A stretch of DNA of 64,000 nt from Antechinus flavipes (Eukaryota). The stretch lies in contig NC_067403.1 of the NCBI RefSeq assembly GCF_016432865.1, positions 247,752,001 to 247,816,000 on the forward strand, written 5' to 3'. Positions 2,148 through 64,000 of this stretch are shown in pieces (the first letter of the stretch is position 1; each line of letters begins with the position of its first letter). The notes beneath the pieces are model-generated. The model worked only from the letters and a program-made list of their open reading frames with translations. It made no database searches and was not told the origin of the DNA. Made by a program: the position numbers and the translations under genes.

Positions 2148-2261
2148 GTTTCTTATGGTCTTTAATCTGAGGGAAGAAAAATATATTGACAAAAAAACCA
2201 CTGATCATTTCTATTATTTAATAGGCTAGGATACATAGTGTTAATGCTTCAGGTATATAAC

Positions 2262-24424: not shown

Positions 24425-25293
24425 CTGTGTCATTCATGAGCTCAGGATGGAATAAAGGATCAGATGCTGTATCAGTGAGAACAGTCCCCATTGCTTTGGA
24501 GGGGTATAAAGTGTGTCAAAAATTAATTTCCTTTTTTACAATAACAACTTTTTGAGGTAGCAGACATATGTGATTATCTCTATTTTATATGTGAAATATA
24601 AGAACATTCAGGAAGGTAAATGACTTTCACTCCATTCAATCACACAACTACTCTAAAAGGTCATTCAAAATCTAAATGTGGTTCTATTCCCTACTCAATT
24701 ATTCACAGAATATCCAGGGCAGGACTGGTGATACGTGATATATAAACCACATGGGAGGATCCCAGAGTTTTAGATTCTTGCTCTGACTCTACCATTCACT
24801 CAGGTTGTGCTCTTAGGTTAGAAAGTCACTTCATATGTGCCTCAGTTTCTTCATCTGTTAGCTGGAGATAATCTCTGCCCTACCTACCTTTCTCATGGGT
24901 TGTTTTTTAGAATATGAATTTCTCTGGAACAAAAAAAAACTTAAATGGAAATATCAAAGTGACACAATAGAATGGACACTGGTTTGCTAGTAGGAGAACT
25001 GAAGCCCACTTCTGCCCTTGGCTGAGTGACCCAGGAAAAGTCATTGAATGCCCTTTTAGAGTAGTTGTGTGATTGTATGGTGTGAAAGTCATTTACCTTC
25101 TTGAATGTTCTTATATTTCACAAATAAAATCATATATAAAATAGAGATATACATTTGCTACCTCAAAAGGTTGTTATTATGAGAAAGGAAAGTAATTTTT
25201 GAAACACTTTACACTCCTCCAAAGCAATGGGGACTGTTCTCACTGGTACAGCATCTGATCCTTTATTCCATCCTGAGCTCATGAATTACACAG
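24425..25293. repeat. Long inverted repeat (arms 24425-24668 and 25044-25293, 375-bp spacer)
   Basis: Core 24432-24534 matches the reverse complement of 25184-25286 with 5 mismatches in 103 nt. The inner parts align with two small indels as far as cattcaa/ttgaatg. Confidence 0.92.
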
Positions 25294-27470: not shown

Positions 27471-28588
27471 TACAAAGCAGCCTTACTAGGTGTCTAAAAA
27501 GCTTTTATCAAAATTACTTCAGCAAGAGGAAAATCACTGGTTTCCTAGGCAGGTTGTGCCATTTTCTAATTGTTTGGAATTTTAGATTCTTTTTCACTAA
27601 GTCTCTATCTGCCGCCCCTCTATATTTTACCTGTAGGCTCCAATGGGGCCAAAAGTAGTGCTCCAGGTGGGGTTTGATCAGGACAGAGCACAGGAGTCTC
27701 TTTCTTTTTTACTGATGCAGCCAAACACTTCAGTTTTTCCCTGTTGCTGTGTCACATTGTTGGTTCATGTTGGTTTTAGAATCATCATAGACTTCCAAGT
27801 CCTTCTCCTTCCCAAACATTTCCATCATTTTCTACAGGTTTTTTTTTTAAACAAGAAAGAACCCTTAACTTTATGTCAACTGAATTGTATCTTGTTGAAT
27901 TTGACCCATTCTCATGATCTGACTGGTTAATAATCCTGAGTCTCATCAAAGCATATATTTTTCTTTGTTTCAGTAGCAAATTTAAGAAGTGTTATGCTAA
28001 TATTTTCATTCAAGTAATTTGTCTAGAGATGCAACAACAAAAGTAACTCATATTTAAACTACAAATGCACTTTATATATCTTGTCTCTTTTGAGTGGGCA
28101 TCCTTCTAAGGCTAGGAGAGATGAGCTGACTTCTCTTGGGTCACATAGTAAATGTGTGAAGTTGGATCTGAACCAAAAGCTTCCTCTCCCGAGCCTCAAA
28201 TTGTCTTCGCTTAATTTAGAAAATAGGAATTTAGAAATCCCCCAGTTCAGATATTCTTAACCTGGGGAATGGGGATGGAGGGTTATCTATGAATTTGTAT
28301 AGAAAAAAATCTCATTTAAATCTCACTACCTTTGGCTTCCTCTGTAATCCTATCTAGTTGTTTTATACGTTTAGAATCATTATTGTGAAAAGGATTCTGA
28401 TGATGTTTAATTATGTCATTTTTAAGATGAGGAAACTGAGACCCAGGGAGAGGGAGGGAATGACTGTTGTATCACCATAGAAATTAGAATATGTCCAGCT
28501 TATGGGAAAGGAGGGAGCTTTTCAAGATTTTATTGTTATCCAAGGCTGTGGCTACTTTGAGTCTGCTGTATTTTGTTCCTTCCTGAAG

Positions 28589-28880
28589 ATTTAAAGCTAG
28601 ATTTTTCCTGAATGCTTTGGGCATGCTATTTGCTGTGGAAGAGGCAAATAGAGACGCCAGTTTCCTGCCCAATATCACAGTGGGATTCCAGCTCTATGAC
28701 TCCTGTGTGTCTGGAACCCGGGCTCTTGGGAGCACTCTTGGTCTCCTGTCTGGACAGCTCCTCCCAACACCCAACTTTGATTGCCACCCCCAGCATCGAC
28801 TCCTGGGAATCATAGGTGGGATGACTTCCCCAGAGTCGGAGGCCATGGCTGAGCTGCTCTCTGTTTACCAAGTCTCTCAG
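28589..28880 (+). CDS. V2R-like exon 2, copy a (292 nt; RDASFLPN)
   Basis: Acceptor ttgttccttcctgaag and donor CAG|gtgagt. Translates (Q)FKARFFLNALGMLFAVEEANRDASFLPNITVGFQLYDSC...GIIGGMTSPES...YQVSQ, in frame with exons 1 and 3. Confidence 0.9.
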
Positions 28881-29645
28881 GTGAGTAATATACCTAGAGA
28901 CTTAAGCAGAGAATTCATAGGTAGAAAGATTACCTGCTCTAGTAGTTTCCTCTCTTCTCCAAGACTAAAAGCCCTTCTTTGTTCCTAAAAACCCAGGGTC
29001 ATTCCCACTCACAGTTTGGTTTGATATACTCCATGATGTAGTGAATAGGGGTCACATAATGTGACTGGAGGAGTCCCAGGAAAAAGCCCAAATAGCTTTG
29101 TGCTGGGTTTTCAATGATTCCTGACATTTTACTATTAGAAATTAATTTCTTTTCGTTACAAACTCTTAAAATGAAAATACTCCATAAAAGAATAACACCT
29201 TGAAACCATTTACCAAAAAACAATAATTGACTTTTAGATAATATTTTTAGATTTATCAAGTGTTTTCCTTACAAAAGCTTTGTGAGCTAAGTAAAGCAAG
29301 GGAAATGAATCTCATTTTACAAGTGTATAAACAAAAAACCCAGAATGTTTGTATGACTTGTTCAATGTCCATAATGGTTTTTTGGACTTTAAGCCACTTA
29401 GATTTCAACTTCATCGCTAAGCTGCCATGGGCAAAATAATCATTTAACATCACTCAGCTTCACTTTCACATCTCTAAAATAGGTATAGCAATGGCAAGTA
29501 TTTCACAGGATTATTGTGACGGTAAAATGAGATAACATGAATAAAATGCTTTAAAATCTTAAAGCACCATATACAAGTTATAGTAGTATATTATATGTAC
29601 ATATATAAATACATATATACATATGTATAAATATATATGTATATA

Positions 29646-29785
29646 TTTGGCTGAGGCAATTGGGATTAAATGACTTGCCCAGGCTCACACAGCTAGGCAG
29701 TGTTAAGTGTCTGAGGCCAGATTAGAACTCAGGTCCTCCTGACTTTAGGGCTGGTGCTCTATCCACTGTGCCACTTAGCTGTTTC
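29646..29785 (-). mobile_element. WSINE1-type SINE with 15-bp TSD; tail converted to an AT microsatellite (also present in unit B at 33865-34004)
   Basis: Antisense WSINE1 body. TSD agtagtatattatat at 29582-29596 and 29786-29800. Confidence 0.88.
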
Positions 29786-30962
29786 AGTAGTATATTATAT
29801 TTATACATAACATATAGTATGATAGTAATTTACTATATTTATATTATATTCAATGACACCCATATTTTATTTAATATTATATTTTATTGATATATTTAAT
29901 ATTATATTATATTTAATGTTACATTTATTAGTGATTAATTATATAAATGTCAAATAATAGTAATTTATTATATTTTTATTATATTTAACTACATCAATAT
30001 TTTATTTAATATTATATTTTATTAATGCATTTAATAGTTTAATATTGTATTAATTTAATGTTGTATTTATTAATAATTAAATTACATCATTATAAAATCA
30101 AATAAATTTGTATGAGTTAATTTTAGAGCAAGTAACACATGGGCCTCTTGTTTCCAGGTTCAGTATTTCTTTATACCATATCAGCATCAGGTTTATAAAG
30201 CTGCATTAAAGAATATGCATAAGAATTTTTGAGTCTTTTGCAACGATGCTAGGATTTGCAGAGGCTGTAATTCCCAGAATGCCCATCAATGGAGTGAGTT
30301 GGATTGGGAATAGGAACTTGGTAGAGGTTGGCTCTGGAGAATAGCTGGTGGCAAGGATTCCACAATTAGCTATATGAACTTGCACTCTTAGGGATAAGAG
30401 CCAGGAGGAAGCTGAGAGATAGGCCGATCCAACTTCCTTATTTTTCAGAACAGAGAGCTGCTATAATTTCCCAAGGTCACATGGGTAGTAAATAGGAGAG
30501 TTGAGCTTCAAGCCCATATGCTAGACTCTAAATCCAGGTTTTTCTCACTGCTTCACAAAGACCTCTCCATGCTAGGGATATTCAGATGACCTTATAGTGT
30601 CTTTACACACTCAGTGATCTCTAATGACTTCTTATTGCTTGTACAAAAAAGTTCATGTTCTTTTCTTCTATTTAATTTTTAAATCTGGACCCTAGCCACC
30701 TAAATCAGTCAGTCAATCAAAAAAGCATTAATAAGCACCAGCTATATTCCAAGAGTTGGAGTTGCCAGTACAAAGATTGGAAAAAATCTGTATTCTCAGG
30801 GGGGCAAGCATTCTAAAAAGGAAGATGAACATATCTCTATCTCTATCCATATCCATATCTCTATCTCTATCCATATCCATATCTCTATCTATCTATGAGT
30901 ATATACGTAATATATACAAAGAGGACAAATGCAAATGAATATAAACTAGTTACATTATATAG

Positions 30963-31208
30963 AGCTACTAGGCAGTGCAGTGGAAAGAGAACTGTGCTTG
31001 GAGCCAGAAAGACTATCTTCCTGAGTTCAAATCCAGGCTCAAACAAATGCTTGATTGGGTCAAATTCCTTAACCATTTTTGCCTCAGCTTTCTCATCTGT
31101 AAAATGAGATGGAGAAGGAAATGGCAAACCATTCCACTATCTTTGCCAAGAAGACCCTAGGTAGGGTCATGGAGAGTTGGACATAATTGAGATGATACAA
31201 CAACAAAA
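30963..31208 (+). mobile_element. MAR1-type SINE (also present in unit B at ~35158-35404)
   Basis: Head ctaggcagtgcagtggaaagag...gagttcaaatcc, core cctcagctttctcatctgtaaaatg, tail ggagaaggaaatggcaaacc...caacaacaaaa. Confidence 0.8.
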
Positions 31209-31235
31209 TAACATATATAACTATTCTATTTATAA

Positions 31236-31276
<41 letters not shown>

Positions 31277-31370
31277 TGTAAGAGAGAGAAAGTATGAGAG
31301 AGAGGAGAAAGGACTTGCTCTTCCCTCTCTTCTCCCTTTATCAGTCATAGTCTCTTACAACTCTTATTTA

Positions 31371-31519
31371 TTTATTTTTGATTATAGCTTTTTATTTACA
31401 AGTTATATGCATGGGTAATTTTACAGCATTGACAATTGCCAAACCTTTTGTCCCAATTTTTCCTCTCCTTCCCCCCATCCCTTCCCCTAGATGGCAGGTT
31501 GACCAATACATGTTAAATA
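31371..31519 (-). mobile_element. 5'-truncated L1 3' end with 15-bp TSD (also present in unit B)
   Basis: Antisense marsupial L1 tail (ttatagctttttatttacaagttatatgcatggg...agatggcaggttgacc). TSD tacaactcttattta at 31356-31370 and 31520-31534. Confidence 0.85.
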
Positions 31520-31868
31520 TACAACTCTTATTTACCCTGTAGGAGATGCTGCATCCAGGAGGGAGCATAGTGAAGCAGACAGAGTTGGGAAGCAGGAAGA
31601 ATCAGGAAGCAGCTCCAAGTTCTATCGCCAGAGAATAGAATTGATAATGCCTTTCTGTTTATCCCTAGAACTCAACACAAGGCCTGGAACATATTAGATG
31701 CTTATTAAGTGTTTGTTGGCTGACCGAGTATAGATTTAAAAGCAAACTTTCCCTGAGTCACAGAGAGAAACATCATAAAGCTATTGAGCTTGTGGAAGAA
31801 CAGTGGTGAATTCCTAATAAGAGGAAAGACACTGGGACCCCACATGCTGGGAGGAACGGATTTTCCTT

Positions 31869-34800
31869 GGCCAAAAGTAGTGCTCCAGGTGGGGTTTGAT
31901 CAGGACAGAGCACAGGAGTCTCTTTCTTTTTTACTGATGCAGCCAAACACTTCAGTTTTTCCCTGTTGCTGTGTCACATTGTTGGTTCATGTTGGTTTTA
32001 GAATCATCATAGACTTCCAAGTCCTTCTCCTTCCCAAACATTTCCATCATTTTCTACAGTTTTTTTTTTAAACAAGAAAGAACCCTTAACTTTATGTCAA
32101 CTGAATTGTATCTTGTTGAATTTGACCCATTCTCATGATCTGACTGGTTAATAATCCTGAGTCTCATCAAAGCATATATTTTTCTTTGTTTCAGTAGCAA
32201 ATTTAAGAAGTGTTATGCTAATATTTTCATTCAAGTAATTTGTCTAGAGATGCAACAACAAAAGTAACTCATATTTAAACTACAAATGCACTTTATATAT
32301 CTTGTCTCTTTTGAGTGGGCATCCTTCTAAGGCTAGGAGAGATGAGCTGACTTCTCTTGGGTCACATAGTAAATGTGTGAAGTTGGATCTGAACCAAAAG
32401 CTTCCTCTCCCGAGCCTCAAATTGTCTTCGCTTAATTTAGAAAATAGGAATTTAGAAATCCCCCAGTTCAGATATTCTTAACCTGGGGAATGGGGATGGG
32501 GGGTTATCTATGAATTTGTATAGAAAAAAATCTCATTTAAATTTCACTACCTTTGGCTTCCTCTGTAATCCTATCTAGTTGTTTTATACATTTAGAATCA
32601 TTATTGTGAAAAGGACTCTGATGATGTTTAATTATGTCATTTTTAAGATGAGGAAACTGAGACCCAGGGAGAGGGAGGGAATGACTGTTGTATCACCATA
32701 GAAATTAGAATATTTCCAGCTTATGGGGAAGGAGGGAGCTTTTCAAGATTTTATTGTTATCCAAGGCTGTGGCTACTTTGAGTCTGCTGTATTTTGTTCC
32801 TTCCTGAAGATTTAAAGCTAGATTTTTCCTGAATGCTTTGGGCATGCTATTTGCTGTGGAAGAGGCAAATAGAGACCCCAGTTTCCTGCCCAATATCACA
32901 GTGGGATTCCAGCTCTATGACTCCTGTGTGTCTGGAACCCGGGCTCTTGGGAGCACTCTTGGTCTCCTGTCTGGACAGCTCCTCCCAACACCCAACTTTG
33001 ATTGCCACCCCCAGCATCGACTCCTGGGAATCATAGGTGGGATGACTTCCCCAGAGTCGGAGGCCATGGCTGAGCTGCTCTCTGTTTACCAAGTCTCTCA
33101 GGTGAGTAATATACCTAGAGACTTAAGCAGAGAATTCATAGGTAGAAAGATTACCTGCTCTAGTAGTTTCCTCTCTTCTCCAAGACTAAAAGCCCTTCTT
33201 TGTTCCTAAAAACCCAGGGTCATTCCCACTCACAGTTTGGTTTGATATACTCCATGATGTAGTGAATAGGGGTCACATAATGTGACTGGAGGAGTCCCAG
33301 GAAAAAGCCCAAATAGCTTTGTGCTGGGTTTTCAATGATTCCTGACATTTTACTATTAGAAATTAATTTCTTTTCGTTACAAACTCTTAAAATGAAAATA
33401 CTCCATAAAAGAATAACACCTTGAAACCATTTACCAAAAAACAATAATTGACTTTTAGATAATATTTTTAGATTTATCAAGTGTTTTCCTTACAAAAGCT
33501 TTGTGAGCTAAGTAAAGCAAGGGAAATGAATCTCATTTTACAAGTGTATAAACAAAAAACCCAGAATGTTTGTATGACTTGTTCAATGTCCATAATGTTT
33601 TTTTGGACTTTAAGCCACTTAGATTTCAACTTCGTCGCTAAGCTGCCATGGGCAAAATAATCATTTAACATCACTCAGCTTCACTTTCACATCTCTAAAA
33701 TAGGTATAGCAATGGCAAGTATTTCACAGGATTATTGTGAAGGTAAAATGAGATAACATGAATAAAATGCTTTAAAATCTTAAAGCACCATATACAAGTT
33801 ATAGTAGTATATTATATGTACATATATAAATACATATATACATATATATATATATATGTATATATTTGGCTGAGGCAATTTGGATTAAATGACTTGCCCA
33901 GGCTCACACAGCTAGGCAGTGTTAAGTGTCTGAGGCCAGATTAGAACTCAGGTCCTCCTGACTTTAGGGCTGGTGCTCTATCCACTGTGCCACTTAGCTG
34001 TTTCAGTAGTATATTATATTTATACATAACATATAGTATGATAGTAATTTACTATATTTATATTATATTCAATGACACCCATATTTTATTTAATATTATA
34101 TTTTATTGATATATTTAATATTATATTATATTTAATGTTACATTTATTAGTGATTAATTATATAAATGTCAAATAATAGTAATTTATTATATTTTTATTA
34201 TATTTAACTACATCAATATTTTATTTAATATTATATTTTATTAATGCATTTAATAGTTTAATATTGTATTAATTTAATGTTGTATTTATTAATAATTAAA
34301 TTACATCATTATAAAATCAAATAAATTTGTATGAGTTAATTTTAGAGCAAGTAACATATGGGCCTCTTGTTTCCAGGTTCAGTATTTCTTTATACCATAT
34401 CAGCATCAGGTTTATAAAGCTGCATTAAAGAATATGCATGAGAATTTTTGAGTCTTTTGCAACGATGCTATGATTTGCAGAGGCTGTAATTCCCAGAATG
34501 CCCATCAATGGAGTGAGTTGGATTGGGAATAGGAACTTGGTAGAGGTTGGCTCTGGAGAATAGCTCATGGCAAGGATTCCACAATTAGCTATATGAACTT
34601 GCACTCTTAGGGATAAGAGCCAGGAGGAAGCTGAGAGATAGGCCGATCCAACTCCCTTATTTTTCAGAACAGAGAGCTGCTATAATTTCCCAAGGTCACA
34701 TGGGTAGTAAATAGGAGAGTTGAGCTTCAAGCCCATATGCTAGACTCTAAATCCAGGTTTTTCTCACTGCTTCACAAAGACCTCTCCATGGTAGGGATAT

Positions 34801-35431
34801 TCAGATGACCTTATAGTGTCTTCACACACTCGGTGATCTCTAATGACTTCTTATTGCTTCTACAATAAAGTTCATGTTCTTTTCTTCTATTTAATTTTTA
34901 AATCTGGACCCTAGCCACCTAAATCAGTCAGTCAATCAAAAAAGCATTAATAAGCACCAGCTATATTCCAAGAGTTGGAGTTGCCAGTACAAAGATTGGA
35001 AAAAATCTGTATTCTCAGGGGGGCAAGCATTCTAAAAAGGAAGATGAACATATCTCTATCTCTATCCATATCCATATCTCTATCTATCTATGAGTATATA
35101 TGTAATATATACAAAGAGGACAAATGCAAATGAATATAAACTAGTTACATTATATAGAGCTACTAGGCAGTGAAGTGGAAAGAGAACTGTGCTTGGAGCC
35201 AGAAAGACTCATCTTCCTGAGTTCAAATCCAGGCTCAAACAAATGCTTGATTGGGTCAAATCCCTTAACCATTTTTGCCTCAGCTTTCTCATCTGTAAAA
35301 TGAGATGGAGAAGGAAATGGCAAACCATTCCACTATCTTTGCCAAGAAGACCTTAGGTAGGATCATGGAGAGTTGGACATAATTGAGATGATACAACAAC
35401 AAAATAACATATATAACTATTCTATTTATAA

Positions 35432-35490
<59 letters not shown>

Positions 35491-36087
35491 TATGAGAGAG
35501 AGGAGAAAGGACTTGTTCTTCCCTCTCTTCTCCCTTTATCAGTCATAGTCCCTTACAACTCTTATTTATTTATTATTTTTGATTATAGCTTTTTATTTAC
35601 AAGTTATATGCATGGGTAATTTTACAGCATTGACAATTGCCAAACCTTTTGTTCCAATTTTTCCTCTCCTTCCCCCATCCCCTCCCCTAGATGACAGGTT
35701 GACCAATACATGTTAAATATACAACTCTTATTTACCCTGTAGGAGATGCTGCATCCAGGAGGGAGCATAGTGAAGCAGACAGAGTTGGGAAGCAGGAAGA
35801 ATCAGGAAGCAGCTCCAAGTTCTATCACCAGAGAATAGAATTGACAATGCCTTTCTGTTTATCCCTAGAACTCAGCACAAGGCCTGGAACATATTAGATG
35901 CTTATTAAGTGTTTATTGGCTGACCGAGTATAGATTTAAAAGCAAACTTTCCCTGGAAATTGTAAGTTGAGTCACAGAGAGAAACATCATAAAGCTATTG
36001 AGCTTGTGGAAGAACAGTGGTGAATTCCTAATAAGAGGAAAGACACTGGGACCCCACATGCTGGGAGGAACGGATTTTCCTTGGCCA
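31869..36087 (+). repeat. Tandem duplication 1, unit B (contains exon 2b)
   Basis: Collinear with unit A. Differs by scattered SNPs, microsatellite length, a 24-bp repeat-unit difference (30831 vs 35050) and a 14-bp indel (gaaattgtaagttg at 35956). Confidence 0.97.
32810..33101 (+). CDS. V2R-like exon 2, copy b (292 nt; RDPSFLPN)
   Basis: Splice sites are identical to copy a. The only exonic difference is G28656 vs C32877 (Ala vs Pro); Pro fits the family pattern NRxPxLLPN. Confidence 0.9.
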
Positions 36088-38444: not shown

Positions 38445-38672
38445 TTTTTGCACTATCTAAAGGCTGTCTGCTTCACTACTCGAGCCCAGGAAGAGATCTT
38501 CTTTACCCAGGATGGAGAGATCCCAGCGATTTTTGATGTAGTGAATAATTACCTTGCTCTTAACCATAGTTTGCAGACTGCCAAAGTTGGACACTTAGAC
38601 TTCAGGGAGCCTCCAGGGAAAGAGCTGGTGATAAATAGCAGTACTATCATTTGGGCTGAGGGTCCTGGAAAG
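38445..38672 (+). CDS. V2R-like exon 4 (228 nt)
   Basis: Acceptor tgtttttgcctcag. Translates FLHYLKAVCFTT...IFFTQDGEIPAIFDVVN...KVGH...LVINSSTIIWAEGPGK. Donor AAG|gtgaga. Confidence 0.92.
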
Positions 38673-38925
38673 GTGAGAACCAAAATCCATTCTCTTCTGC
38701 TGCTCTCCTTTAATAATAGTGCCAACTAATTAGGGGAAGGAAGTAATTCTGGGACTCAGTCATTACATTTTAACTCCAAGTATGTACCACTGGAATTTCC
38801 TCCATTAGTGAGAACTCCGAAAAGTACAAATTTGGGAACTCCTGAAAATTACTTATTTTATACATGCTGTTAGGTTACCTCTAAACTTAACTCAGTTCTC
38901 TTTTTTTCTTTCTGCCTTTGAGTAG

Positions 38926-39049
38926 GTCCCTCTTTCAGTTTGCAGCAAAACATGTCCTTTGGGAACCCGGAAGTCAGTTATTCAGGGGCAACCAAGCTGC
39001 TGCTACCAGTGTCTTCACTGCCCAAAAGGAGAAATAGCCTATATCTCAG
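38926..39049 (+). CDS. V2R-like exon 5, copy a (124 nt, cysteine-rich domain)
   Basis: VPLSVCSKTCPLGTRKSVIQGQPSCCYQCLHCPKGEIAYIS. The 124-nt length is canonical for CaSR/V2R. AG/GT sites are intact; ends phase 1. Confidence 0.95.
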
Positions 39050-40554
39050 GTAAGGAAGACAGGAGAATGGTGGGACCATTTAGACCCCAAGCAACTATGG
39101 AGCTAGATTCAGGATGAGAGCATTATGGAACTAGTTGAAGAAGTAAGTTGGTTGAAAGTGAGAAGAGTCAGATGGGAGAAATGGAAAAAAATAATACTAG
39201 TAACTTCTGATGGGAAAAAGACAAAAAACATGAAGATATCGTTCACAGAATTTCACAGTTGGAAGGATTGTAGTGGATTTCTAGTCTGGTCCATACTTAG
39301 GAATTTTTTTTAAAGCAACATATCTGAAAAGTCATCATTCAGTCATTTCTTGAAGGTTTCCTTCTGGCAAGAGTTGAAAATCTAGTTTAAAATGAGCCAA
39401 AGAACTTGGAAGATGTGGTTCAAATCCAAGTTTTATTTTGAAGTAGTATGTTAAAATATAGCATGTTATGATCAGAATCCAAAAGGATTTCAATTGGCTT
39501 GAATGGTGGATTGAAATTGTCAAGTCAAAAAACATTTATTCAATCCATACTATGTGCCAGGTACTGTGTAAAGTTAATAAGGGAAAGTGCTTTAAAATTA
39601 TAATAGCTAATAATAATATTATTTATATAGCACTTACTATGTGCTAGGCATTGGGCTAAATGGGCTATTGTGCTCCTCATTTTACAGATAAAGAAATTGA
39701 GGCAAACAGAGGTTGTGACTTGCCCAGGGTCACAATAGATGGAAAGGATCTGAGATCAAATTTGAACTCAAATGCTTGTGACTCCAGCACCAGCTCTCTA
39801 TAGCTGTCTCAAATACAGAACTTGAGTCTAAAAGATCAATTGAACAAATGCAGGATAGGACAGAAAAAGTTAGAAGGCAATTCATGTTAAAAAAAAACCC
39901 CAGAGGTTTTACTGCACCAAGTGAGCAAAAAGCAGCAAGCATTATTAAGTGGAGTCTGTGTGTCAGGTATAGTGACCGTGAGCACAGTATTATGTGATAA
40001 CAAAAAAGCAAATAGGAATTAAGGTTGCTTTTACAGGAATTTTGATAACAAGGGAAGCTGGTAGTTGTGAATCCTTGTGATCCTTACTGCTAGGGAGGGC
40101 AAAGCTAGGGAATTGCTTGAATTCAGGAGTTCAGAGAGCTGCAAATAGGATCAAGGTATCCAGAACAACTGATGTCAGCCCCAATATGATAAGCCTCTGG
40201 AAGTAAAAACCTTCTGGTTATCTAAGGAGAGAAAAACTGGCCCAGGTAGAAAAAATGGAGCAGGTTAAAGCTTCTATGCTGATCAGTATTGGGATTAGAC
40301 CAATAAGATTGTATTTTCAACCTGGACATTGAAGAGATTAAATTAAATTTCCTAAAAATGCTTAAAATTTCTGGTGAACTGAAGTTATAACAAGAGCCAG
40401 CAATATCATATGGCAGTCATCACAATGTGATGAAAATATATACTGCTTTGACAAGAGGAAGGGAAGATTTACTTGAGGAAGGAAAAGTTCTCCCAGTGGG
40501 AAAAATCTTTCTCTTCTCACTTCCTATATGCGACTTACCCCAAATCTCTTTCAG

Positions 40555-41462
40555 ACAGTGCCAGTTGCCTGAAGTGCCCAGAGGACCAATGGCCAAACAA
40601 TGAAAAGGATCAGTGCATCCCTAAGATCCGTGATTTCCTCTCCTACACGGAGCCCCTGGGCATGGCTTTAGCCTTCTGTACAACCTTTCTCTTCCTCCTT
40701 TCTCTGACCATCCTTGGCACATTCATACGGCATCATCATACTCCCATAGTTAGAGCCAACAACCGCAGGCTAAGTTACATCCTTCTCTGTTCCCTGGCAC
40801 TATGCTTCCTCTGCCCATTCATGTTCATTGGCCACCCAGTACCCCTGACCTGTGCCCTGCGCCAGGCAGCCTTTGGGATTTTCTTCACAGTCTGTGTGTG
40901 TGCCACTCTGGCCAAGACCATCATTGTTGTGTCTGCCTTCAGGGCCACCAGACCAGATGCCAGACTCAGGAAGTGGGCAGGACCACGTCTCCCCAGTGCC
41001 GTCCTCATTGGCTTCTCCTTGGTCCAAGTTGTTCTGTGTATGTTCTGGGTCATTGGCTGGCCTCCGGTGCCCGTGAACTCGACAGAAGCAGGACCCACGG
41101 TCACCATGCTGTGTGGTGCAGGCTCCTCAGAGTTTTTCTATATCATGCTGGGCTACTTGGGCTTCCTGGCCCTGGTCAGTCTGGTGGTGGCCTTCCTGGC
41201 CCGGCAACTGCCTGACACTTTCAATGAAGCCAAGCACATCACCCTCAGCATGTTAGTCTTCTCCTGTGTCTGGATCGCCTTCATCCCAGCTCACCTGAGC
41301 GCTCAGGGCAAGGACACTGTGGCTGTGGAGATCTTTGCTATTTTAGCATCTGGGGCAGGCCTGATGTGCTGTTTGTTCTTCCCTAAGTGCTACATCATCC
41401 TGCTACGGCCTGAGAAGAACACAAAGGACCAAATGAGGGGCAATCGTCATTTCAAGAAATGA
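40555..41462 (+). CDS. V2R-like exon 6, copy a (end of CRD and the 7TM domain, 908 nt to stop)
   Basis: Acceptor tctctttcag. Translates (D)SASCLKCPEDQWPN...CIPK...TPIVRANN...LAKT...LPDTFNEAK...FFPKCYIILLRPEKN with a short C-tail. Completes 9 CRD cysteines and an 868-aa protein. Confidence 0.95.
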
Positions 41463-41718
41463 AACCCAAACCAGTCCTTCTATTTTTCTCATCATAGATG
41501 GGAGGGAAGATTCTCAGCATTTCCTAGCTCCCTCCAAGCTATTTTTGTGCCATGAAAGGGCCAGTATCTCATCTTGATACCTGGCTATCATTGATACATA
41601 CCATGGGTTTTCTCTCCTAGACTGGAACATTTCCTCTTTACTTTTAAGCCAATCCAAATCTTACCAGTCCTTCAGGCCCATCTAAAATATTCCCTTCAAT
41701 TATGAAGCTTCTGATTAC

Positions 41719-41950
41719 TGTTGCTCAGTCATCAATCATTTCTGACTCTATGTGACCTGTGGACATTTGTGCATAGGGTTTTCTTAGCAAAGGTACAGTA
41801 GTGGCTTGTTATTTCATTTTCCAGTGTGTTATCATTTTCACAGATGAAAAACTGAGGCAAATAGAGTTTGTAACTTTTCTAAGGTCATACGATTTCATAA
41901 GTGTCTGAGGCCACATTTGAACTTAGATCACGACTTCAGGCTCTGCACTG
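41719..41950 (-). mobile_element. MAR1-type SINE in the 3' flank (copy at ~45391-45620)
   Basis: Antisense tail (tgttgctcagtcat...ctgactctatgtgacc...ttttcttagcaaag) and core (acagatgaaaaactgaggc). Confidence 0.7.
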
Positions 41951-42160
41951 GCTGCAGTCTTCCCTGACCACTTAAATTTCCATTGATGACTTATATACCT
42001 TTTATTAACATCAAATATGGAGCTTAAACATTCTCAAATAGTTGCATGTATCCTAGAACTGCCTATTGGACTACTAGGTGAACTTCATAAGAGTAAGCAC
42101 CAATATTTCATCTATATCCATTTCAGTATTTGGTCCAGAGTTGGGTACCAGTAGATGTTC

Positions 42161-42166
42161 AATAAA
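42161..42166 (+). terminator. Candidate polyadenylation signal for exon 6a (second copy at 45837-45842 for exon 6b)
   Basis: First AATAAA after the stop codon. It lies in an L2-terminus-like context (agtagatgttcaataaat) and is followed by a GT-rich tract (tgtttattgtttatgttgt). Confidence 0.5.
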
Positions 42167-42264
42167 TCCCTGTTTATTGTTTATGTTGTACTTGTGACAC
42201 ACTCTTCTCATATATGTGGACACCAGGAAAACTATTCCAGTTTTAGATATCTTTTTGGTTTTTA

Positions 42265-42384
42265 CTTGCTCTTAACCATAGTTTGCAGACTGCCAAAGTT
42301 GGACACTTAGACTTCAGGGAGCATCCAGGGAAAGAGCTGGTGATAAATAGCAGTACTATCATTTGGGCTGAGGGTCCTGGAAAG
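42265..42384 (+). pseudogene. 5'-truncated copy of exon 4 (lacks the native acceptor, keeps the donor)
   Basis: Begins mid-exon at CTT GCT CTT AAC. One change, CCT>CAT (Pro>His). Donor AAG|gtgaga is retained. Confidence 0.85.
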
Positions 42385-42637
42385 GTGAGAACCAAAATCC
42401 ATTCTCTTCTGCTGCTCTCCTTTAATAATAGTGCCAACTAATTAGGGGAAGGAAGTAATTCTGGGACTCAGTCATTACATTTTAACTCCAAGTATGTACC
42501 ACTGGAATTTCCTCCATTAGTGAGAACTCAGAAAAGTACAAATTTGGGAACTCCTGAAAATTACTTATTTTATAAATGCTGTTAGGTTACCTCTAAACTT
42601 AACTCAGTTCTCTTTTTTTCTTTCTGCCTTTGAGTAG

Positions 42638-42761
42638 GTCCCTCTTTCAGTTTGCAGCAAAACATGTCCTTTGGGAACCCGGAAGTCAGTTATTCAGGGG
42701 CAACCAAGCTGCTGCTACCAGTGTCTTCACTGCCCAAAAGGAGAAATAGCCTATATCTCAG
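42638..42761 (+). CDS. V2R-like exon 5, copy b (124 nt, identical to copy a)
   Basis: Nucleotide-identical to 38926-39049 with intact splice sites. Whether it is used is unknown. Confidence 0.75.
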
Positions 42762-44226
42762 GTAAGGAAGACAGGAGAATGGTGGGACCATTTAGACCCC
42801 AAGCAACTATGGAGCTAGATTCAAGATGAGAGAATTATGGAACTAGTTGAAGAAGTAAGTTGGTTGAAAGTGAGAAGAGTCAGATGGGAGAAATGGAAAA
42901 GAATAATACTAGTAACTTCTGATGGGAAAAAGACAAAAAACATGAAGATATCGTTCACAGAATTTCACAGTTGGAAGGATTGTAGTGGATTTCTAGTCTG
43001 GTCCATACTTAGGAATTTTTTTAAAGCAACATATCTGAAAAGTCATCATTCAGTCATTTCTTGAAGGTTTCCTTCTGGCAAGAGTTGAAAATCTAGTTTA
43101 AAATGAGCCAAAGAACTTGGAAGATGTGGTTCAAATCCAAGTTTTATTTTGAAGTAGTATGTTAAAATATAGCATGTTATGATCAGAATCCAAAAGGATT
43201 TCAATTGGATTGAATGGTGGATTGAAACTGTCAAGTCAAAAAACATTTATTCAATCCATACTATGTGCCAGGTACTGTGTAAAGTTAATAAGGGAAAGTG
43301 CTTTAAAATTATAATAACTAATAATAATATTATTTATATAGCACTTGCTATGTGCTGGGAAAGAAACTGAGGCAAACAGAGGTTGTGACTTGCCCAGGGT
43401 CACAATAGATGGAAAGGACCTGAGGTCAAATTTGAACTCAAATGCTTGTGACTCCAGCACCAGCTCTCTGTAGCTGTCTCAAATACAGAACTTGAGTCTA
43501 AAAGATCAATTGAACAATTGCAGGATAGGACAGAAAAAGTTAGAAGGCAATTCATGTTAAAAAAAAAAGACCCAGAAGTTTTAGTGCACTAAGTGAGCAA
43601 AAGGCAGCAAGCATTATTAAGTGGAGTCTGTGTGTCAGGTATAGTGACCATGAACACAGTGTTATGTGATAACAAAAAAGCAAATAGGAATTAAGGTTGC
43701 TTTTACAGGAATTTTGATTACAAGGGAAGCTGGTAGTTGTGAATCCTTGTGATCCTTGCTGCTAGAGAGAGCAAAGCTAGGGAATTGCTTGAGTTCAGGA
43801 GTTCAGAGAGATGCAAATAGGATCAAGGTATCCAGACCAACTGACATCAGCCCCAATATGACAAGCCTCCAGAAGTAAAGACCTTCTGGTTACCTAAGGA
43901 GAGAAAAACTGGCCCAGGTTAGAAAAATGGAGCAGGTTAAAGCTTCTATGCTGATCAGTATTGGGATTAGACCAATAAGATTGTATTTTCAACCTGGACA
44001 TTGAAGAGATTAAATTAAATTTCCTAAAAATGCTTAAAATTTCTGGTGAACTGAAGATATAACAAGAGCCAGCAATATCATATGGCAGTCATCACAATGT
44101 GATGAAAATATATACTGCTTTGACAAGAGGAAGGGAAGATTTACTTGAGGAAGGAAAAGTTCTCCCAGTGGGAAAAATCTTTCTCTTCTCACTTCCTATA
44201 TGCGACTTACCCCAAATCTCTTTCAG

Positions 44227-45134
44227 ACAGTGCCAGTTGCCTGAAGTGCCCAGAGGACCAATGGCCAAACAATGAAAAGGATCAGTGCATCCCCAAGATC
44301 CGTGATTTCCTCTCCTACACGGAGCCCCTGGGCATGGCTTTAGCCTTCTGTACAACCTTTCTCTTCCTCCTTTCTCTGACCATCCTTGGCACATTCATAC
44401 GGCATCATCATACTCCCATAGTCAGAGCCAACAACCGCAGGCTAAGTTACATCCTTCTTTGTTCCCTGGCGCTATGCTTCCTCTGCCCATTCATGTTCAT
44501 TGGCCACCCAGTACCCCTGACCTGTGCCCTGCGCCAGTCAGCCTTTGGGATTTTCTTCACAGTCTGTGTGTGTGCCACTCTGGCCAAGACCATCATTGTT
44601 GTGTCTGCCTTCAGGGCCACCAGACCAGATGCCAGACTCAGGAAGTGGGCAGGACCAAGTCTCCCCAGTGCCGTCCTCATTGGCTTCTCCTTGGTCCAAG
44701 TTGTTCTGTGTATGTTCTGGGTCATTGGCTGGCCTCCGGTGCCCGTGAACTCGACAGAAGCAGGACCCACGGTCACCATGCTGTGTGGTGCAGGCTCCTC
44801 AGAGTTTTTCTATGTCATGCTGGGCTACTTGGGCTTCCTGGCCCTGGTCAGTCTGGTGGTGGCCTTCCTGGCCCGTCGATTGCCTGACACCTTCAACGAA
44901 GCCAAGCACATCACCCTCAGCATGTTGGTCTTCTCCTGTGTCTGGATCTCCTTCATCCCAGCCCACCTGAGCGCTCAGGGCAAGGACACTGTGGCTGTGG
45001 AGATCTTTGCTATTTTAGCATCTGGGGCAGGCCTGATGTGCTGTTTGTTCTTCCCTAAGTGCTATATCATCCTGCTACGGCCTGAGAAGAACACAAAGGA
45101 CCAAATGAGGGGCAATCGTCATTTCAAGAAATGA
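44227..45134 (+). CDS. V2R-like exon 6, copy b (alternative 7TM terminal exon)
   Basis: Intact acceptor and open frame. Differs from 6a by 16 nt (11 synonymous, 5 nonsynonymous: A>S, R>S, I>V, Q>R, A>S). Whether it is used is unknown. Confidence 0.75.
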
Positions 45135-48100
45135 AACCCAAACCAGTCCTTCTATTTTCCTCATCATAGATGGGAGGGAAGATTCTCAGCATTTCCTAGC
45201 TCCCTCCAAGCTCTCTTTGTGCCATGAAAGGGCCAGTATCTCATCTTGATACCTGGCTATCATTGATACATGCCATGGGTTTCCTCTCCTAGACTGGAAC
45301 ATTTCCTTTTTACTTTTAAGCCAATCCAAATCTTACCAGTCCTTCAGGCCCATCTAAAATATTCCCTTCAATTATGAAGCTTCTGATTACTGTTGCTCAG
45401 TCATCAATCATTTCTGACTCTATGTGACCTGTGGACATTTGTGCATAGGGTTTTCTTAGCAAAGGTACAGTAGTGGCTTGTTATTTCATTTTCCAGTGTG
45501 TTATCATTTTCACAGATGAAAAACTGAGGCAAATAGAGTTTGTAACTTTTCTAAGGTCATACGATTTCATAAGTGTCTGAGGCCACATTTGAACTTAGAT
45601 CACGACTTCAGGCTCTGCACTGGCTGCAGTCTTCCCTGACCACTTAAATTTCCATTGATGGCTTATATACCTTTTATTAACATCAAATATGGAGCTTAAA
45701 CATTCTCAAATAGTTGCATGTATCCTAGAACTGCCTATTGGACTACAAGGTGAACTTCATAAGAGTAAGCACCAAATTTTATTTCATCTATATCCATTTC
45801 AGTATTTGGTCCAGAGTTGGGTACCAGTAGATGTTCAATAAATCCCTGTTTATTGTTTATGTTGTACTTGTGACACACTCTTCTCATATATGTGGACACC
45901 AGGAAAACGATTCCAGTTTTAGATATCTTTTTGGTTTTTACTTACTCAAAACTATAGATTATGACCCTCTGGGGGTATTTGTACTTTTACTAGTCAGCTA
46001 GAGGATGTATAAACAGTTCAACATAAAGGGATTTATTTAGTGAAATAGTATTGTATAATATAGAGAAGAAGAAATTGAATCCTACTCCACGAACTTGGGG
46101 CACATTCACTCTAAACATGTCCATGTGTTGTTATGACACACATTTGAAGGAGTAACTCATGTTCCTGATAATATATTTGTACTGTTCACATAGGACTTAT
46201 TCCTCCCTAGGAATGATATCTCCATTTTTATTGTAGTTTCTGAGTATCTTTTTATCCCTAGTATATGGGTTTCATTTCTTGTAACATCTATTGGACATTG
46301 ACTTCTATTTACGATAGTAACTAAAAAGAGCTTCTCTTCAAAAGGGGAGGCTGTCAATTCTTTAGGGATATTCATAATCATATGGTAGTTAGGAACCACT
46401 GTTTATTACCCAAGATACAAGAGGCAGGTAGAATTTTTTTCTGGATATGATTATTGTATTCTTTTACTAACTTGTTTCAACTTGCACATCCACCATTTTT
46501 GTCCCAAGCTTTTTACTAATACAGCATTGGGAAATTTTTGAAGTTCCCATGAATTCCTGGTTGCCGGTTTTCATTCCCCTTTAAACCAGTTTAGGGTCCA
46601 TATTTTAATAAGCCCCAAATGACCACGAGAATCTGAAGTAGTATGGCTTTCTTGGACTGCCTCCAAATCCTCTGAGTCTGCCATACAAATGAATGAGCAG
46701 GGGAAAACAAAAATCTGAAAGTATCATCCTTTACTTTAAGCCCTTTGTTCCAAATTTCTGCCTTTCACATGCAAGTCTCCCAGGCTTTAAATTTCTTGGA
46801 ATTTTTTTTTTGTTTATTTAGAAAAAAATGATTGGCTGTGAGTTCTCCTTGTGAAATATTTTGAAAATATGGATTGTGAAAAACAGATGGTGTTAGAGAT
46901 CAAACGTGGGTTTGAGCCTTGGGGCCACCACTTAGTAACTTTGTGATTTTCAACAGGTCACTATTCATTGAGCTTGTTTCCCCATCTATTAAATGAAAAG
47001 AATCTTAATTGTGTTTTCTGCCTCCTGTGATAATCATTGTGATGATTATATGACATAATTATGTGAAACATTTTGTAAAGCTTAAACACTAGATTAATAT
47101 CCACTAGATCTTTAGCTTTCTTGATTTTTCTTCATTGATTTGCCTTCATTTTGCCCAACTATTGTTGCACAATAGAGCTTCCTAAGATTGGATAAACTGT
47201 GAGTGGAAAAAAATTGATTCTCAGAGATGGGGAAGGAATAAGTGCATCTAATGAATCTGAATTCATAGGATCATCAGATTATAAATCTAGTGTTAGAAGA
47301 GATTTAAAAAGGTATCTAGATCCCCTCCCCAATTTTACACATAAAACACATTCCTTACACATAAAGAAGTTAAGATGAATAGATTTTAAATGATTTATTC
47401 AGGATTAGGCAGCTAGTAAGGGTCAGAGACAAGATTTGAAAAGATGTGTTGCTGATTGCAATTTCAACATTCTATCCATTATGGCAAGGCAATTTCCCTG
47501 CTCTCAGAAGGTTAAAGGTTCAGACTTTGGCTTAAATGACACACTTAGTTTACAATATCACCAAAAGGTACAGGAACATTAACAATCAACATGATGGAAA
47601 ATTGTACCCATAACAGTTTTAGTTGGATATAATTCCCCTGGTCTTTCTCAGTCCCTCACAAAGACTCATTCTAGATACTTGTAGTAACAACTCTATGAAT
47701 AGTGAAGGTATCCCTAGATCAAAGGAATAATCATTTTCTCCTTTTGCTTGCTGTTATCCTCTATGATGTTTCATGCTGTAACCTGGGCCTCAGTGGATCA
47801 ATTGTCAAACTAGGATGTACTTTGGAGCTATATGTCTACAGATGTTCCCTCTCTTCTATTTTATGAGATTGTTTTTTTTTTTTTTGGGATTCCCATTAAG
47901 CCTTGTTTTCCTTATCTGATCTAATTAAATTATTACTGTGATTTCCTGCCTTGGAAATGTACCCTTAATATAGTAATTAAGACTTTGTCCGGGTGGAAAA
48001 ATATGTAGATTTGTGATCATGGCCAGTTCTCACTAAGAATCCCTTTCTCTTTAGCCTTAGCCTAGTGAGAACTCAGACAGCCAGTAAAACAAAGAATAGT

Positions 48101-50836: not shown

Positions 50837-51787
50837 CTAGAGACAGCTTTTCTTGGAGAAGACATTTCTTGTGAGTACTTTTGTCAGGGCCCCTTTCATC
50901 TCACTATTCCTTAGTGTGTAAATTATGGGGTTGAGAAGAGGAGTACCTAGTGTATACACCAGTGAAAGCAACTGGTCCTTCTTGGGGGAATAGCTCGAGT
51001 TTGGCCGAAGGTACATGAACATGCAGCAACCATACTGTAGGAGGACCACCATGAGGTGGGAGGAGCAGGTAGAGAAAGCCCGGCGGCGGCCTGATGTTGA
51101 ATGGATGCCCAATATGGCAATCGTAATGAGGGCATAGGAAATAGCAATGAGGAGAAAGGGGAAGGCGATGGCCAGTGTGCCTGCCACCAGCACTGAGAGC
51201 TCAGGGAGACGGCTGCGGGTGCAGGTCAGTCGCATCACTGGGGGTACATCACAGAAGAAGTGCTCAATGCTTCTGGAATGGCAAAAAGGCAAGCAGAAGA
51301 TAAAGGCCACCAGCTGTAAGGATAGGATGAAACCAATGGCTATGGAGGCCACCACCAGGTTGACACAGAGCTTCTGAGTCATGATCAAGGGGTACTGTAG
51401 GGGATAGCAGATTGCCACGTAGCGGTCATAGGCCATAACAGCCAATAGGAAGCAGTCAGTGCTACCAAGCCCAATGAAAAATAGCATCTGGGTAGCACAA
51501 CCCAGAAATGTAATGGCTTTATGCCTCTTCATGGTGTTCACCAGGATGTGGGGAACCACTGTTGCAGTGTACCAGATCTCCACAATGGACAGACTGCCTA
51601 GGAAGTAGTACATTGGTGTGTGGAGACGGGCTTCCATCTGAATGGCAGCCACTATAAGGATATTTCCTGTGAGGATCATGGTGTAGACTAGACTGATCCC
51701 CAAGAAAACCAAGACCTGCAGCTCTGGGTGTGTAGGATAAGCTAGGAATACAAACTCTGTTGATAGTGTTTGGTTCACCCAAGTCAT
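50837..51787 (-). CDS. OR10W1: Olfactory receptor OR10W1-like, 316 aa, intact
   Basis: OR motifs are intact ([40 protein letters not shown]). [24 protein letters not shown] and SLVYTLGTP match recalled human OR10W1. The acceptor lies 17 nt before the ATG (cag at 51805-51807). Confidence 0.93.
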
Positions 51788-63554: not shown

Positions 63555-64000
63555 CTTATCTGCTAAAGAAAGCATAAAGAAAGGATGAGTTGCTGATTTA
63601 TCTAAATAAAACCAGAATCCAAAATGTCATTTTTATTGTTGCTCAGAATACACCGCAGTGAAAGTTAATTTACTTGAGGAGTTCTTTCTCTGTCCCTTCA
63701 GTAGAATGATAGGAACTGATTCTCCCTGATCACACCTTCCTCTACATCTTGGGGTAATCTCAGGCCATCACTGCTTGATGTCCCTATACCTACTCCTTCT
63801 CCCTTTTCTTCCATGAGAGTAGAGTTTCTTTATTCAAAGTGACTTCTTGGTTTGGAGACAAAATCTCATACGAGTGTAGATCTCATTTCCAAGTGGCTTT
63901 TTTTCTTTGCAAAATTATAAAGCTTAAAACTTTATTATATATAATATAATAATAAATAAAAATTAATAAAATCAATAATTAATAATAAAATTAACCTCAA

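What the first reader, a model, noticed from the sequence alone, without database searches (positions are those of the whole stretch)
40555..45134. Twin 7TM terminal exons show a purifying-selection signature
A base-by-base comparison of exon 6a and 6b gives 16 differences in 908 nt, 11 synonymous and 5 nonsynonymous, with no indels or stops. Neutral drift should make roughly 7 in 10 coding changes nonsynonymous, so both lineages look constrained. This is unexpected for a promoterless partial duplicate unless it is reached by splicing from exon 4 or 5a. The same pattern would arise if the two units descend from separately functional alleles or paralogues. The changes fall in TM3, ICL2, TM5, ICL3 (ARQLP vs ARRLP) and TM6, so G-protein coupling could differ.
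Basis: partly seen in the sequence, partly recalled or inferred. Interest (0 to 1): 0.72.

Follow-up and report, generated by a model that had tools for sequence, protein, structure and literature searches.

The report
Duplicated receptor exon: selection signal ambiguous
A smell-type (V2R/calcium-sensor-like) receptor gene of the yellow-footed antechinus carries two near-identical copies of its last, membrane-spanning exon whose 16 differences are mostly silent, but that pattern cannot show that the spare copy is in use, because this exon demonstrably swaps sequence with a sister gene in related marsupials and only six changes lie on the spare copy's own branch.

Summary
Exons 6a (40555-41462) and 6b (44227-45134) differ at 16 of 908 bases, 11 silent and 5 replacing, with no indels or stops.

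- **Significance:** the skew beats neutral expectation (P about 0.001 under generic models, 0.0055 with the locus's own mutation spectrum). dN/dS is 0.14, the same as between antechinus and Tasmanian devil orthologues.
- **Structure:** the twins lie in a 3.7-kb head-to-tail duplication. It starts inside exon 4 and carries exon 5, exon 6, the 3' UTR and an AATAAA. It is absent from the devil and dunnart orthologues.
- **Per branch:** four outgroup sequences put 10 changes on 6a (3 replacing, 7 silent) and 6 on 6b (2 replacing, 4 silent). 6b alone is not significant (P 0.06-0.11).
- **History:** twin divergence is patchy (about 1% background, 4-5% patches), and six 6a changes cluster in 88 bases.
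- **Possible donor:** in the devil and the dunnart, exon 6 alone is 97-98% identical to an inverted sister gene 125-136 kb away (other exons 77-88%). This offers a route for already-filtered variants.

No RNA evidence exists.

The parts
38445..38672 (+). Exon 4 (228 nt) of the V2R/CaSR-like gene. The duplication breakpoint lies inside it at 38549.
   Evidence: Acceptor ctcag|TTTTTGC and donor GGAAAG|gtgaga read. tblastn of the RefSeq model P0378 covers it.
38549..42261 (+). Tandem duplication B, unit 1. It holds the 3' 124 nt of exon 4, intron 4, exon 5a, intron 5, exon 6a, the 3' UTR and a poly(A) signal.
   Evidence: Self-blast. Unit alignment gives 67 substitutions and 6 indel runs.
42262..45957 (+). 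Tandem duplication B, unit 2, head-to-tail with unit 1 and no spacer. It holds the acceptor-less exon 4' fragment, exon 5b and exon 6b.
   Evidence: Both units map to one single-copy stretch in Sarcophilus (L006) and Sminthopsis (L003).
42255..42290 (+). Novel junction, 3' flank joined to mid-exon 4, with only about 3-5 nt of microhomology (tttttactt|gctcttaacc).
   Evidence: Direct reading. The junction of duplication A likewise has 5 nt of microhomology, GGCCA.
38926..39049 (+). Exon 5a (124 nt, NCD3G cysteine-rich part).
   Evidence: Zero differences from 5b.
42638..42761 (+). Exon 5b, identical to 5a, with identical splice sites.
40555..41462 (+). Exon 6a, the 7TM terminal exon used by the public gene model. 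It carries 10 derived changes (7 S, 3 N: S172R, R245Q, S269A).
44227..45134 (+). Exon 6b, the intact twin. It carries 6 derived changes (4 S, 2 N: A132S, I224V).
41204..41291 (+). Cluster of 8 of the 16 twin differences, 6 of them derived in 6a. It is a candidate conversion tract.
   Evidence: Clustering test P = 0.006 for the 6a-derived changes and 0.002 for all 16 (the window length was chosen after seeing the data).
39799..40298 (+). Hot patch in intron 5: 5.4% twin divergence against about 1% background. The changes are derived in both copies and the sequence is unique.
42161..42166 (+). AATAAA 699 nt after the 6a stop, 95 nt before the junction. It is conserved in Sarcophilus.
45837..45842 (+). 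Twin AATAAA after 6b.
27647..36087 (+). Tandem duplication A (units 27647-31868 and 31869-36087). It repeats the 301-nt exon 2, shows 0.92% substitution divergence, and lies in the same gene 2.4 kb upstream of duplication B.

Best explanation
The twins are most likely a real tandem duplication of the gene's 3' cassette that arose on the Antechinus lineage. The cassette runs from mid-exon 4 to past the poly(A) signal. The duplication was probably made together with the exon-2 duplication by backward template switching at short microhomologies.

Transcripts should normally end in 6a, which has its own acceptor, stop codon, 3' UTR and AATAAA. 6b is then a spare, promoterless copy that can be reached only by read-through.

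The silent-rich pattern of differences is real, but it reflects second-hand constraint. The variants were filtered by selection while they sat in a working exon 6, and were then moved by gene conversion or recombination. Three such working sources exist:
- 6a itself.
- Allelic copies in a highly heterozygous species.
- Exon 6 of the inverted sister gene, which exchanges with this exon in dasyurids.

The pattern therefore does not show that 6b is itself used or selected.

Shown: the duplication structure, its absence in two outgroups, the polarised counts, the mosaic divergence, and concerted evolution of exon 6 in the devil and the dunnart.

Inferred: the conversion tract into 6a, the donor, and the silence of 6b.
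For: - **Structure and single-copy outgroups:**
- **Junction microhomologies:** 3-5 nt at both duplications, with no Ns in the window.
- **Terminal exon 6a:** it keeps its own AATAAA, and all splice sites are identical between the twins. The RefSeq model ends in 6a.
- **Polarisation with four outgroup sequences:** 6a 3N:7S, 6b 2N:4S. 6b alone gives P = 0.056-0.11.
- **Relative rates:** the used exon 6a has more derived changes (10) than 6b (6). This rejects '6a constrained, 6b neutral, independent point mutations' (P = 0.004-0.02), unless the 41204-41291 cluster is one imported tract. With that assumption everything fits.
- **Mosaic history:** copy-specific versus shared-derived changes are 16:11 in exon 6, 17:41 in background noncoding and 24:7 in the intron hot patch. 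Fisher tests give 0.016 and 2e-5.
- **Synonymous-site divergence:** 5.1% at synonymous sites against about 1% in the flanks, while nonsynonymous sites at 0.73% match the flanks.
- **Exon-restricted concerted evolution with the paralogue:** within-species identity in exon 6 is 97.2% and 98.1%, against 77-88% in the other exons, and the introns cannot be aligned. The dunnart pair shares a 3-nt deletion. The exon 3 tree splits by gene and the exon 6 tree by species.
- **Heterozygosity:** reported as high for this species (PMC9290055).
Against: - The antechinus paralogue's exon 6 could not be fetched, because it lies outside the window and no protein for it is in the databases. The donor is therefore untested.
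- None of the 16 derived states is seen in the four outgroup sequences, apart from 41208.
- The skew survives removal of the cluster (3N:7S, P = 0.007-0.024). Both branches lean silent and 6b has no stop, indel or radical change, as true constraint on both copies would predict.
- dN/dS of the twins (0.139) equals that of functional orthologues (0.14-0.15).
- The reality of the duplication rests on junction logic only. No reads were laid.
Confidence: 0.5

Rival explanations
1. Both terminal exons are in use as alternative 3' cassettes (exon 4 or 5a spliced to 5b/6b after read-through of the first poly(A) site). Both are then kept intact by purifying selection, giving two 7TM variants that differ at five residues.
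For: - Both branches are silent-biased (3N:7S and 2N:4S). The overall P is 0.001-0.0055.
- Omega is 0.139, the same as between species.
- 6b is fully intact with identical splice sites and its own AATAAA.
- If the intron hot patch (5.4%) marks the true age of the duplication, synonymous divergence in exon 6 (5.2%) fits that age. The replacement deficit would then be large.
- Replacement changes are spread evenly, 3 versus 2, as expected for equal constraint.
Against: - 6b alone is not significant, and the likelihood ratio is only 3-6.6.
- 6a has a complete terminator 95 nt before the junction.
- No RNA run holds the stretch, and the public model uses only 6a.
- A near-identical spare exon gives little for selection to act on.
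- The clustered differences and mosaic divergence point to conversion.
Confidence: 0.2
2. This is an assembly artefact. 6a and 6b are the two haplotypes of a single-copy exon, stacked in tandem by the long-read assembler in a very heterozygous region. The differences are then ordinary allelic polymorphisms of one working gene.
For: - The assembly is PacBio CLR with canu correction, wtdbg2 and pilon, with no haplotig purging reported, and heterozygosity is reported as high (PMC9290055).
- Two tandem repeats of about 4 kb with similar background divergence of about 1% sit in one gene.
- The other features are all expected of alleles: mosaic divergence, derived states in both copies and a silent-rich pattern.
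- Both outgroup assemblies are single-copy.
Against: - There are no Ns or contig ends in the window.
- Each repeat has a novel junction between non-homologous points with only 3-5 nt of microhomology, one of them inside exon 4. An overlap-based assembler cannot create such a junction without reads that carry it, whereas replication-based duplication typically does.
- The units also differ by indels of 41, 24 and 14 nt.
Confidence: 0.2
3. This is chance plus ordinary constraint. 6a is constrained, 6b drifts neutrally, and the 2N:4S on 6b is sampling noise. No conversion is involved.
For: 6b's branch is compatible with neutrality (P = 0.056-0.11). Its total of 6 changes in 908 nt matches the 0.5% per-lineage background.
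Against: The relative-rate tests reject this model as it stands: 10 changes on 6a against 6 on 6b (P = 0.004-0.02) and replacements 3 against 2 (P = 0.02-0.08). The clustering and the mosaic also need an extra process.
Confidence: 0.07

Closest known systems
Class C GPCRs of the V2R / calcium-sensing-receptor-like group (Monodelphis Vmn2r616 type; named 'extracellular calcium-sensing receptor-like' in marsupial RefSeq)
   Same: There is a full-length Pfam 7tm_3 match. ANF_receptor matches exons 2-3. Exon sizes of 228, 124 and 908 nt are typical of V2R genes. The exon-6 piece 40842-41459 (206 aa) is 83% identical to Vmn2r616. The antechinus RefSeq protein shares a 90% cluster with the Sarcophilus and Sminthopsis orthologues. 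The closest solved structure is CaSR (E 1e-43).
   Different: It sits in an olfactory-receptor cluster, as one of two ancient paralogues rather than in a large V2R array. The antechinus copy carries two internal tandem duplications that are absent from its orthologues.
Tandem exon duplication as a source of alternative or mutually exclusive exons (Kondrashov and Koonin 2001; Letunic, Copley and Bork 2002; cited from my own knowledge, not read here)
   Same: There are head-to-tail duplicated exons with intact, identical splice sites. The 301-nt exon 2 is not a multiple of three, so only one-copy splicing stays in frame.
   Different: Here the duplicated cassette is terminal and brings its own stop codon and poly(A) signal. 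Use of the second copy therefore needs terminator read-through, not just splice choice. No transcript evidence exists.
Concerted evolution by interlocus gene conversion limited to part of a gene (classic cases include the L/M opsins and the globins; cited from my own knowledge)
   Same: Paralogues that split before the marsupial radiation (exon 3 tree) are 97-98% identical within each species in one exon only. The boundaries are sharp and lineage-specific changes are shared.
   Different: This was demonstrated here in Sarcophilus and Sminthopsis, not in Antechinus itself. The partners are inverted and 125-136 kb apart.
False haplotypic duplications in long-read assemblies (Ko et al. 2022, Genome Biology; cited from my own knowledge)
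   Same: The genome is heterozygous, no purging step was used, and the copies are about 1-2% diverged.
   Different: There is no gap or contig end between the copies. The junctions are novel microhomology joins rather than overlaps.

Membership tests
Class C GPCR, V2R/CaSR-like | Seven-transmembrane domain of the 7tm_3 type | tested here: met
   Pfam PF00003, positions 1-251 of 251, E 5e-76 (6a) and 1e-75 (6b).
Class C GPCR, V2R/CaSR-like | Venus-flytrap ligand-binding domain and cysteine-rich linker encoded upstream in the same gene | tested here: met
   ANF_receptor matches in exons 2 and 3. Exon 5 encodes the Cys-rich motif. The public model P0378 carries ANF_receptor, NCD3G and 7tm_3.
Class C GPCR, V2R/CaSR-like | Orthology to the marsupial Vmn2r616-type gene (synteny and tree) | tested here: met
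   The locus is collinear, introns included, with Sminthopsis L003 and Sarcophilus L006, and has the same flanking OR genes. It falls in the exon 3 clade with Mdo616.
Alternative terminal exons from tandem exon duplication | Both copies keep a usable acceptor, an open frame, a stop codon and a poly(A) signal | tested here: met
Alternative terminal exons from tandem exon duplication | Transcripts that end in each copy | not testable with these tools
The public model uses only 6a.
Alternative terminal exons from tandem exon duplication | Purifying selection on the branch of the downstream copy itself | tested here: inconclusive
   The 6b branch is 2N:4S, P = 0.056-0.11, likelihood ratio 3-6.6.
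Interlocus gene conversion / concerted evolution of exon 6 | Paralogues are more alike within a species than orthologues are between species, and only in the converted segment | tested here: met
   Sarcophilus exon 6 is 97.2% identical against 77-85% for the other exons. Sminthopsis is 98.1% against 78-88%. There is a shared 3-nt deletion, and the two trees disagree.
Interlocus gene conversion / concerted evolution of exon 6 | Variant states of 6a or 6b are present in the antechinus paralogue (donor identified) | not testable with these tools
The paralogue should lie about 110-125 kb upstream of the window.
False haplotypic duplication (assembly artefact) | Half read depth in the copies and no reads across the junction | not tested
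False haplotypic duplication (assembly artefact) | Copies separated by a gap or contig end, or joined through an overlap | tested here: not met
   There are no Ns in the window. The junctions have 3-5 nt of microhomology between non-homologous points.

The most novel reading that the evidence does not exclude
One V2R-like gene uses two selectable 3' cassettes (5a/6a or 5b/6b). A single ligand-binding domain would then be paired with either of two 7TM domains that differ in TM3, ICL2, TM5, ICL3 and TM6, and both would be kept by selection. Combined with the two exon-2 copies, this would be a small combinatorial receptor locus in a mammal.
Probability: 0.15. Interest if true: 0.6.

Novelty: new member of a known kind. 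Interest (0 to 1): 0.33.

Why it matters
If 6b were truly in use, this would be a rare mammalian case of a chemosensory receptor switching its signalling domain by choice of terminal exon.

As it stands, the locus is mainly a caution. A silent-rich pattern between young duplicates does not show that both are functional when the sequence can receive already-filtered variants by gene conversion or from alleles.

The by-product may be the more useful result for people who study chemoreceptor evolution and build dN/dS tests on such genes. Exon 6 alone evolves in concert between two paralogues that predate the marsupial radiation, at least in the Tasmanian devil and the fat-tailed dunnart.

Tried and rejected
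**Steps that led nowhere**
Depth, junction-spanning contigs and outgroup letters from other Antechinus species were therefore not obtained.
Protein searches used the piece 40842-41459 only.
- The public RefSeq protein P0378, which spans that place, was looked up by its database id to find the annotation. Local scripts handled the whole exon.
- The word search with the 206-aa piece found nothing above 59% identity, because full-length relatives fall outside its length window. The representative search was needed to reach Vmn2r616.
- The antechinus paralogue has no protein in any cluster. A gene-by-gene walk of about 110 kb was judged not feasible with 7 look-ups left.
Exons were handled one by one by reference.
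- A literature search for V2R gene conversion in the 7TM exon found no paper.

**Explanations rejected**
- CpG hypermutability as the cause of the silent excess: only 2 of the 11 silent changes are CpG transitions.
- Transition bias or GC-to-AT bias: these lower the neutral replacement fraction only to 0.655.
- The intron hot patch as a repeat family: it is unique sequence.
- Error-prone synthesis at the duplication: the changes are derived in both copies.
Full report
**What is there**

The window is Antechinus flavipes chromosome record CM028222.1, positions 247,752,001-247,816,000. Locus L007, fetched through the public protein P0378, is identical to the window from position 15979. An olfactory-receptor cluster, with four intact OR reading frames, encloses one class C GPCR gene on the + strand.
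- Exon 2 and exon 3 match ANF_receptor.
- Exon 4 is 38445-38672 (228 nt).
- Exon 5 is 38926-39049 (124 nt, cysteine-rich).
- The terminal exon is 40555-41462 (908 nt). It matches Pfam 7tm_3 end to end.
- The closest solved structure is the calcium-sensing receptor.

The word search found only relatives at or below 59% identity, because its length window excludes full-length proteins. I therefore ran the representative search. It gave Monodelphis Vmn2r616 at 83% identity. A word search seeded with that protein then listed the marsupial 'extracellular calcium-sensing receptor-like' group.

The antechinus RefSeq model (902 aa) sits in one 90% cluster with the Sarcophilus and Sminthopsis orthologues. 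It ends in exon 6a.

**The duplications**

Self-comparison shows two head-to-tail tandem duplications with no spacer and no Ns.
- Duplication A is 27647-31868 / 31869-36087. It holds the 301-nt exon 2.
- Duplication B is 38549-42261 / 42262-45957.

Duplication B starts inside exon 4. Unit 2 therefore begins with an acceptor-less 124-nt piece of exon 4, followed by exon 5b (42638-42761) and exon 6b (44227-45134).

Each unit also carries the whole 3' UTR and a single AATAAA 699 nt after the stop codon (42161 and 45837). All splice sites are letter-identical between the twins.

Both junctions join non-homologous points with 3-5 nt of microhomology. The orthologous loci of Sarcophilus (L006) and Sminthopsis (L003) align collinearly through the introns and are single-copy for both segments. 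As assembled, both duplications therefore arose on the Antechinus lineage.

Two backward template switches in one replication event would give exactly this layout: A-A, a spacer, then B-B. That is inference.

**The observation**

There are 16 differences in 908 nt, 11 synonymous and 5 nonsynonymous, with no indel and no stop.

The neutral nonsynonymous fraction is 0.69-0.76 under kappa/CpG models. It is 0.655 with the mutation spectrum estimated from the polarised noncoding changes of this same locus, which is rich in C-to-T changes. P(N<=5 of 16) is about 0.001 or 0.0055 respectively.

dS is 0.0525, dN is 0.0073 and omega is 0.139. The antechinus-Sarcophilus orthologue comparison gives omega 0.14-0.15. 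CpG decay does not explain the skew, because only 2 of the 11 silent changes are CpG transitions.

**Polarisation**

I used exon 6 of the Sarcophilus and Sminthopsis orthologues and paralogues as outgroups. All four agree at 15 of the 16 sites.
- Ten changes are derived in 6a: 7 silent, plus S172R, R245Q and S269A.
- Six changes are derived in 6b: 4 silent, plus A132S and I224V.

Against neutrality, the 6a branch gives P = 0.007-0.024. The 6b branch gives P = 0.056-0.11. The likelihood ratio for constraint on 6b is only 3-6.6.

Across 19 homologues, each copy has one change at a well-conserved residue (6b A132S, 6a S269A). The other changes sit at variable positions. 6b shows no sign of decay, but with six changes none is expected yet.

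**Signs that the history is not a clean split**

1. Divergence between the units is patchy. The background is about 1%. A 500-nt patch in intron 5 (39799-40298) reaches 5.4%, and the 3' part of exon 6 (41142-41393) reaches 4%.
2. I counted copy-specific changes against those shared by both copies but absent from the outgroups. The ratios are 16:11 in exon 6, 17:41 in background noncoding sequence and 24:7 in the hot patch. Fisher tests give 0.016 and 2e-5. The hot patch is unique sequence and its changes are derived in both copies.
3. Synonymous sites of exon 6 differ by 5.1%, several times the flank level. Nonsynonymous sites at 0.73% are close to the flank level. Measured against the flanks, the skew is therefore an excess of silent changes as much as a lack of replacements.
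4. Six of the ten 6a-derived changes lie within 88 nt (P about 0.006; the window length was chosen after seeing the data).
5. The annotated exon 6a has more derived changes than the spare. This contradicts '6a constrained, 6b drifting' (P = 0.004-0.02), unless the cluster is one imported tract. With that assumption the remaining counts fit.

**A concrete route for second-hand constraint**

Sarcophilus and Sminthopsis each have a second gene of this type, in inverted orientation 125-136 kb away.

Within each species, ortholog and paralog are 97.2% and 98.1% identical across exon 6. Exons 1-5 are only 77-88% identical, and the introns cannot be aligned. The Sminthopsis pair even shares a 3-nt deletion and about two dozen lineage-specific substitutions.

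A tree of exon 3 separates the two genes across all marsupials, Monodelphis 615 and 616 included. A tree of exon 6 puts all dasyurid sequences together and pairs the two Sminthopsis genes.

Exon 6, and only exon 6, therefore evolves in concert by gene conversion in this family. A tract copied from a working paralogue brings mostly silent differences. The same holds for exchange with single-copy alleles in a species reported as highly heterozygous (PMC9290055).

I could not fetch the antechinus paralogue, so the donor is inferred and not shown.

**What could not be done**

I used the piece 40842-41459 instead.
- The public protein P0378, which spans the place, was looked up by its database id only.
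- All holders of the stretch are DNA-type contig sets, and none is on record as RNA. Expression is therefore untested.
- The assembly was made from PacBio CLR reads with canu correction, wtdbg2 and pilon, with no purging step mentioned. A haplotype-stacking artefact therefore remains possible. I rate it at about 0.2, because the junctions are novel microhomology joins with no gap.

**Verdict**

The count is right and the skew is statistically real. The step from 'silent-rich differences' to 'both exons are selected, so 6b must be spliced in' does not hold on present evidence. 6b's own branch is too short to test. The divergence is a mosaic. This very exon also has a demonstrated habit of receiving sequence from a functional relative.

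- The most likely picture (about 0.5) is a real, lineage-specific duplication with 6a in use and 6b as a silent spare, whose differences are largely inherited or imported.
- An assembly artefact keeps about 0.2.

The scan noted this locus before, in sibling findings on the same stretch (s1-200961, s1-200962, s1-200986).

Noticed in passing
L006 17980-18900 vs L001 16746-17665; L003 21651-22567 vs L004 18268-19183: Exon 6 alone is 97-98% identical between two inverted paralogues 125-136 kb apart in Sarcophilus and Sminthopsis. Their other exons are 77-88% identical. The exon 3 tree splits by gene and the exon 6 tree by species. This is exon-restricted concerted evolution of genes that split before the marsupial radiation.
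   Followed up: yes
window 42262-42384: The junction of duplication B places a T-rich 3' flank in front of ccatag|TTTGCAG|ACTG. This could act as a new acceptor for a 96-nt piece of exon 4' (42289-42384), which would be in frame if spliced between exon 4 and exon 5b. It is untested.
   Followed up: no
window 39799-40298 (twin 43469-43970): An intron-5 patch shows 5.4% twin divergence against about 1% around it. The changes are derived in both copies and the sequence is unique. It points to patchy homogenisation or to old haplotypes, and remains unexplained.
   Followed up: partly
window 27647-36087: A second tandem duplication repeats the 301-nt exon 2 (28589-28889 / 32810-33110), with one A/P difference. 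Splicing in both copies shifts the reading frame. Residues 173-207 of the 902-aa public model do not align to the window by tblastn.
   Followed up: partly
window 40569: Both antechinus exon 6 copies carry the paralogue-type base at one of the few sites that separate ortholog from paralog in both outgroup species. This hints at an older conversion from the paralogue in this lineage.
   Followed up: no
window 24425-24668 and 25044-25293: An inverted repeat of 250 nt at 89% identity lies just upstream of exon 1 of the receptor gene.
   Followed up: no
window 1209-2201(-), 17192-18127(+), 50837-51787(-), 62592-63575(-): There are four intact olfactory receptor reading frames (Pfam 7tm_4). The same flanking ORs surround the orthologue in Sarcophilus and Sminthopsis.
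   Followed up: partly
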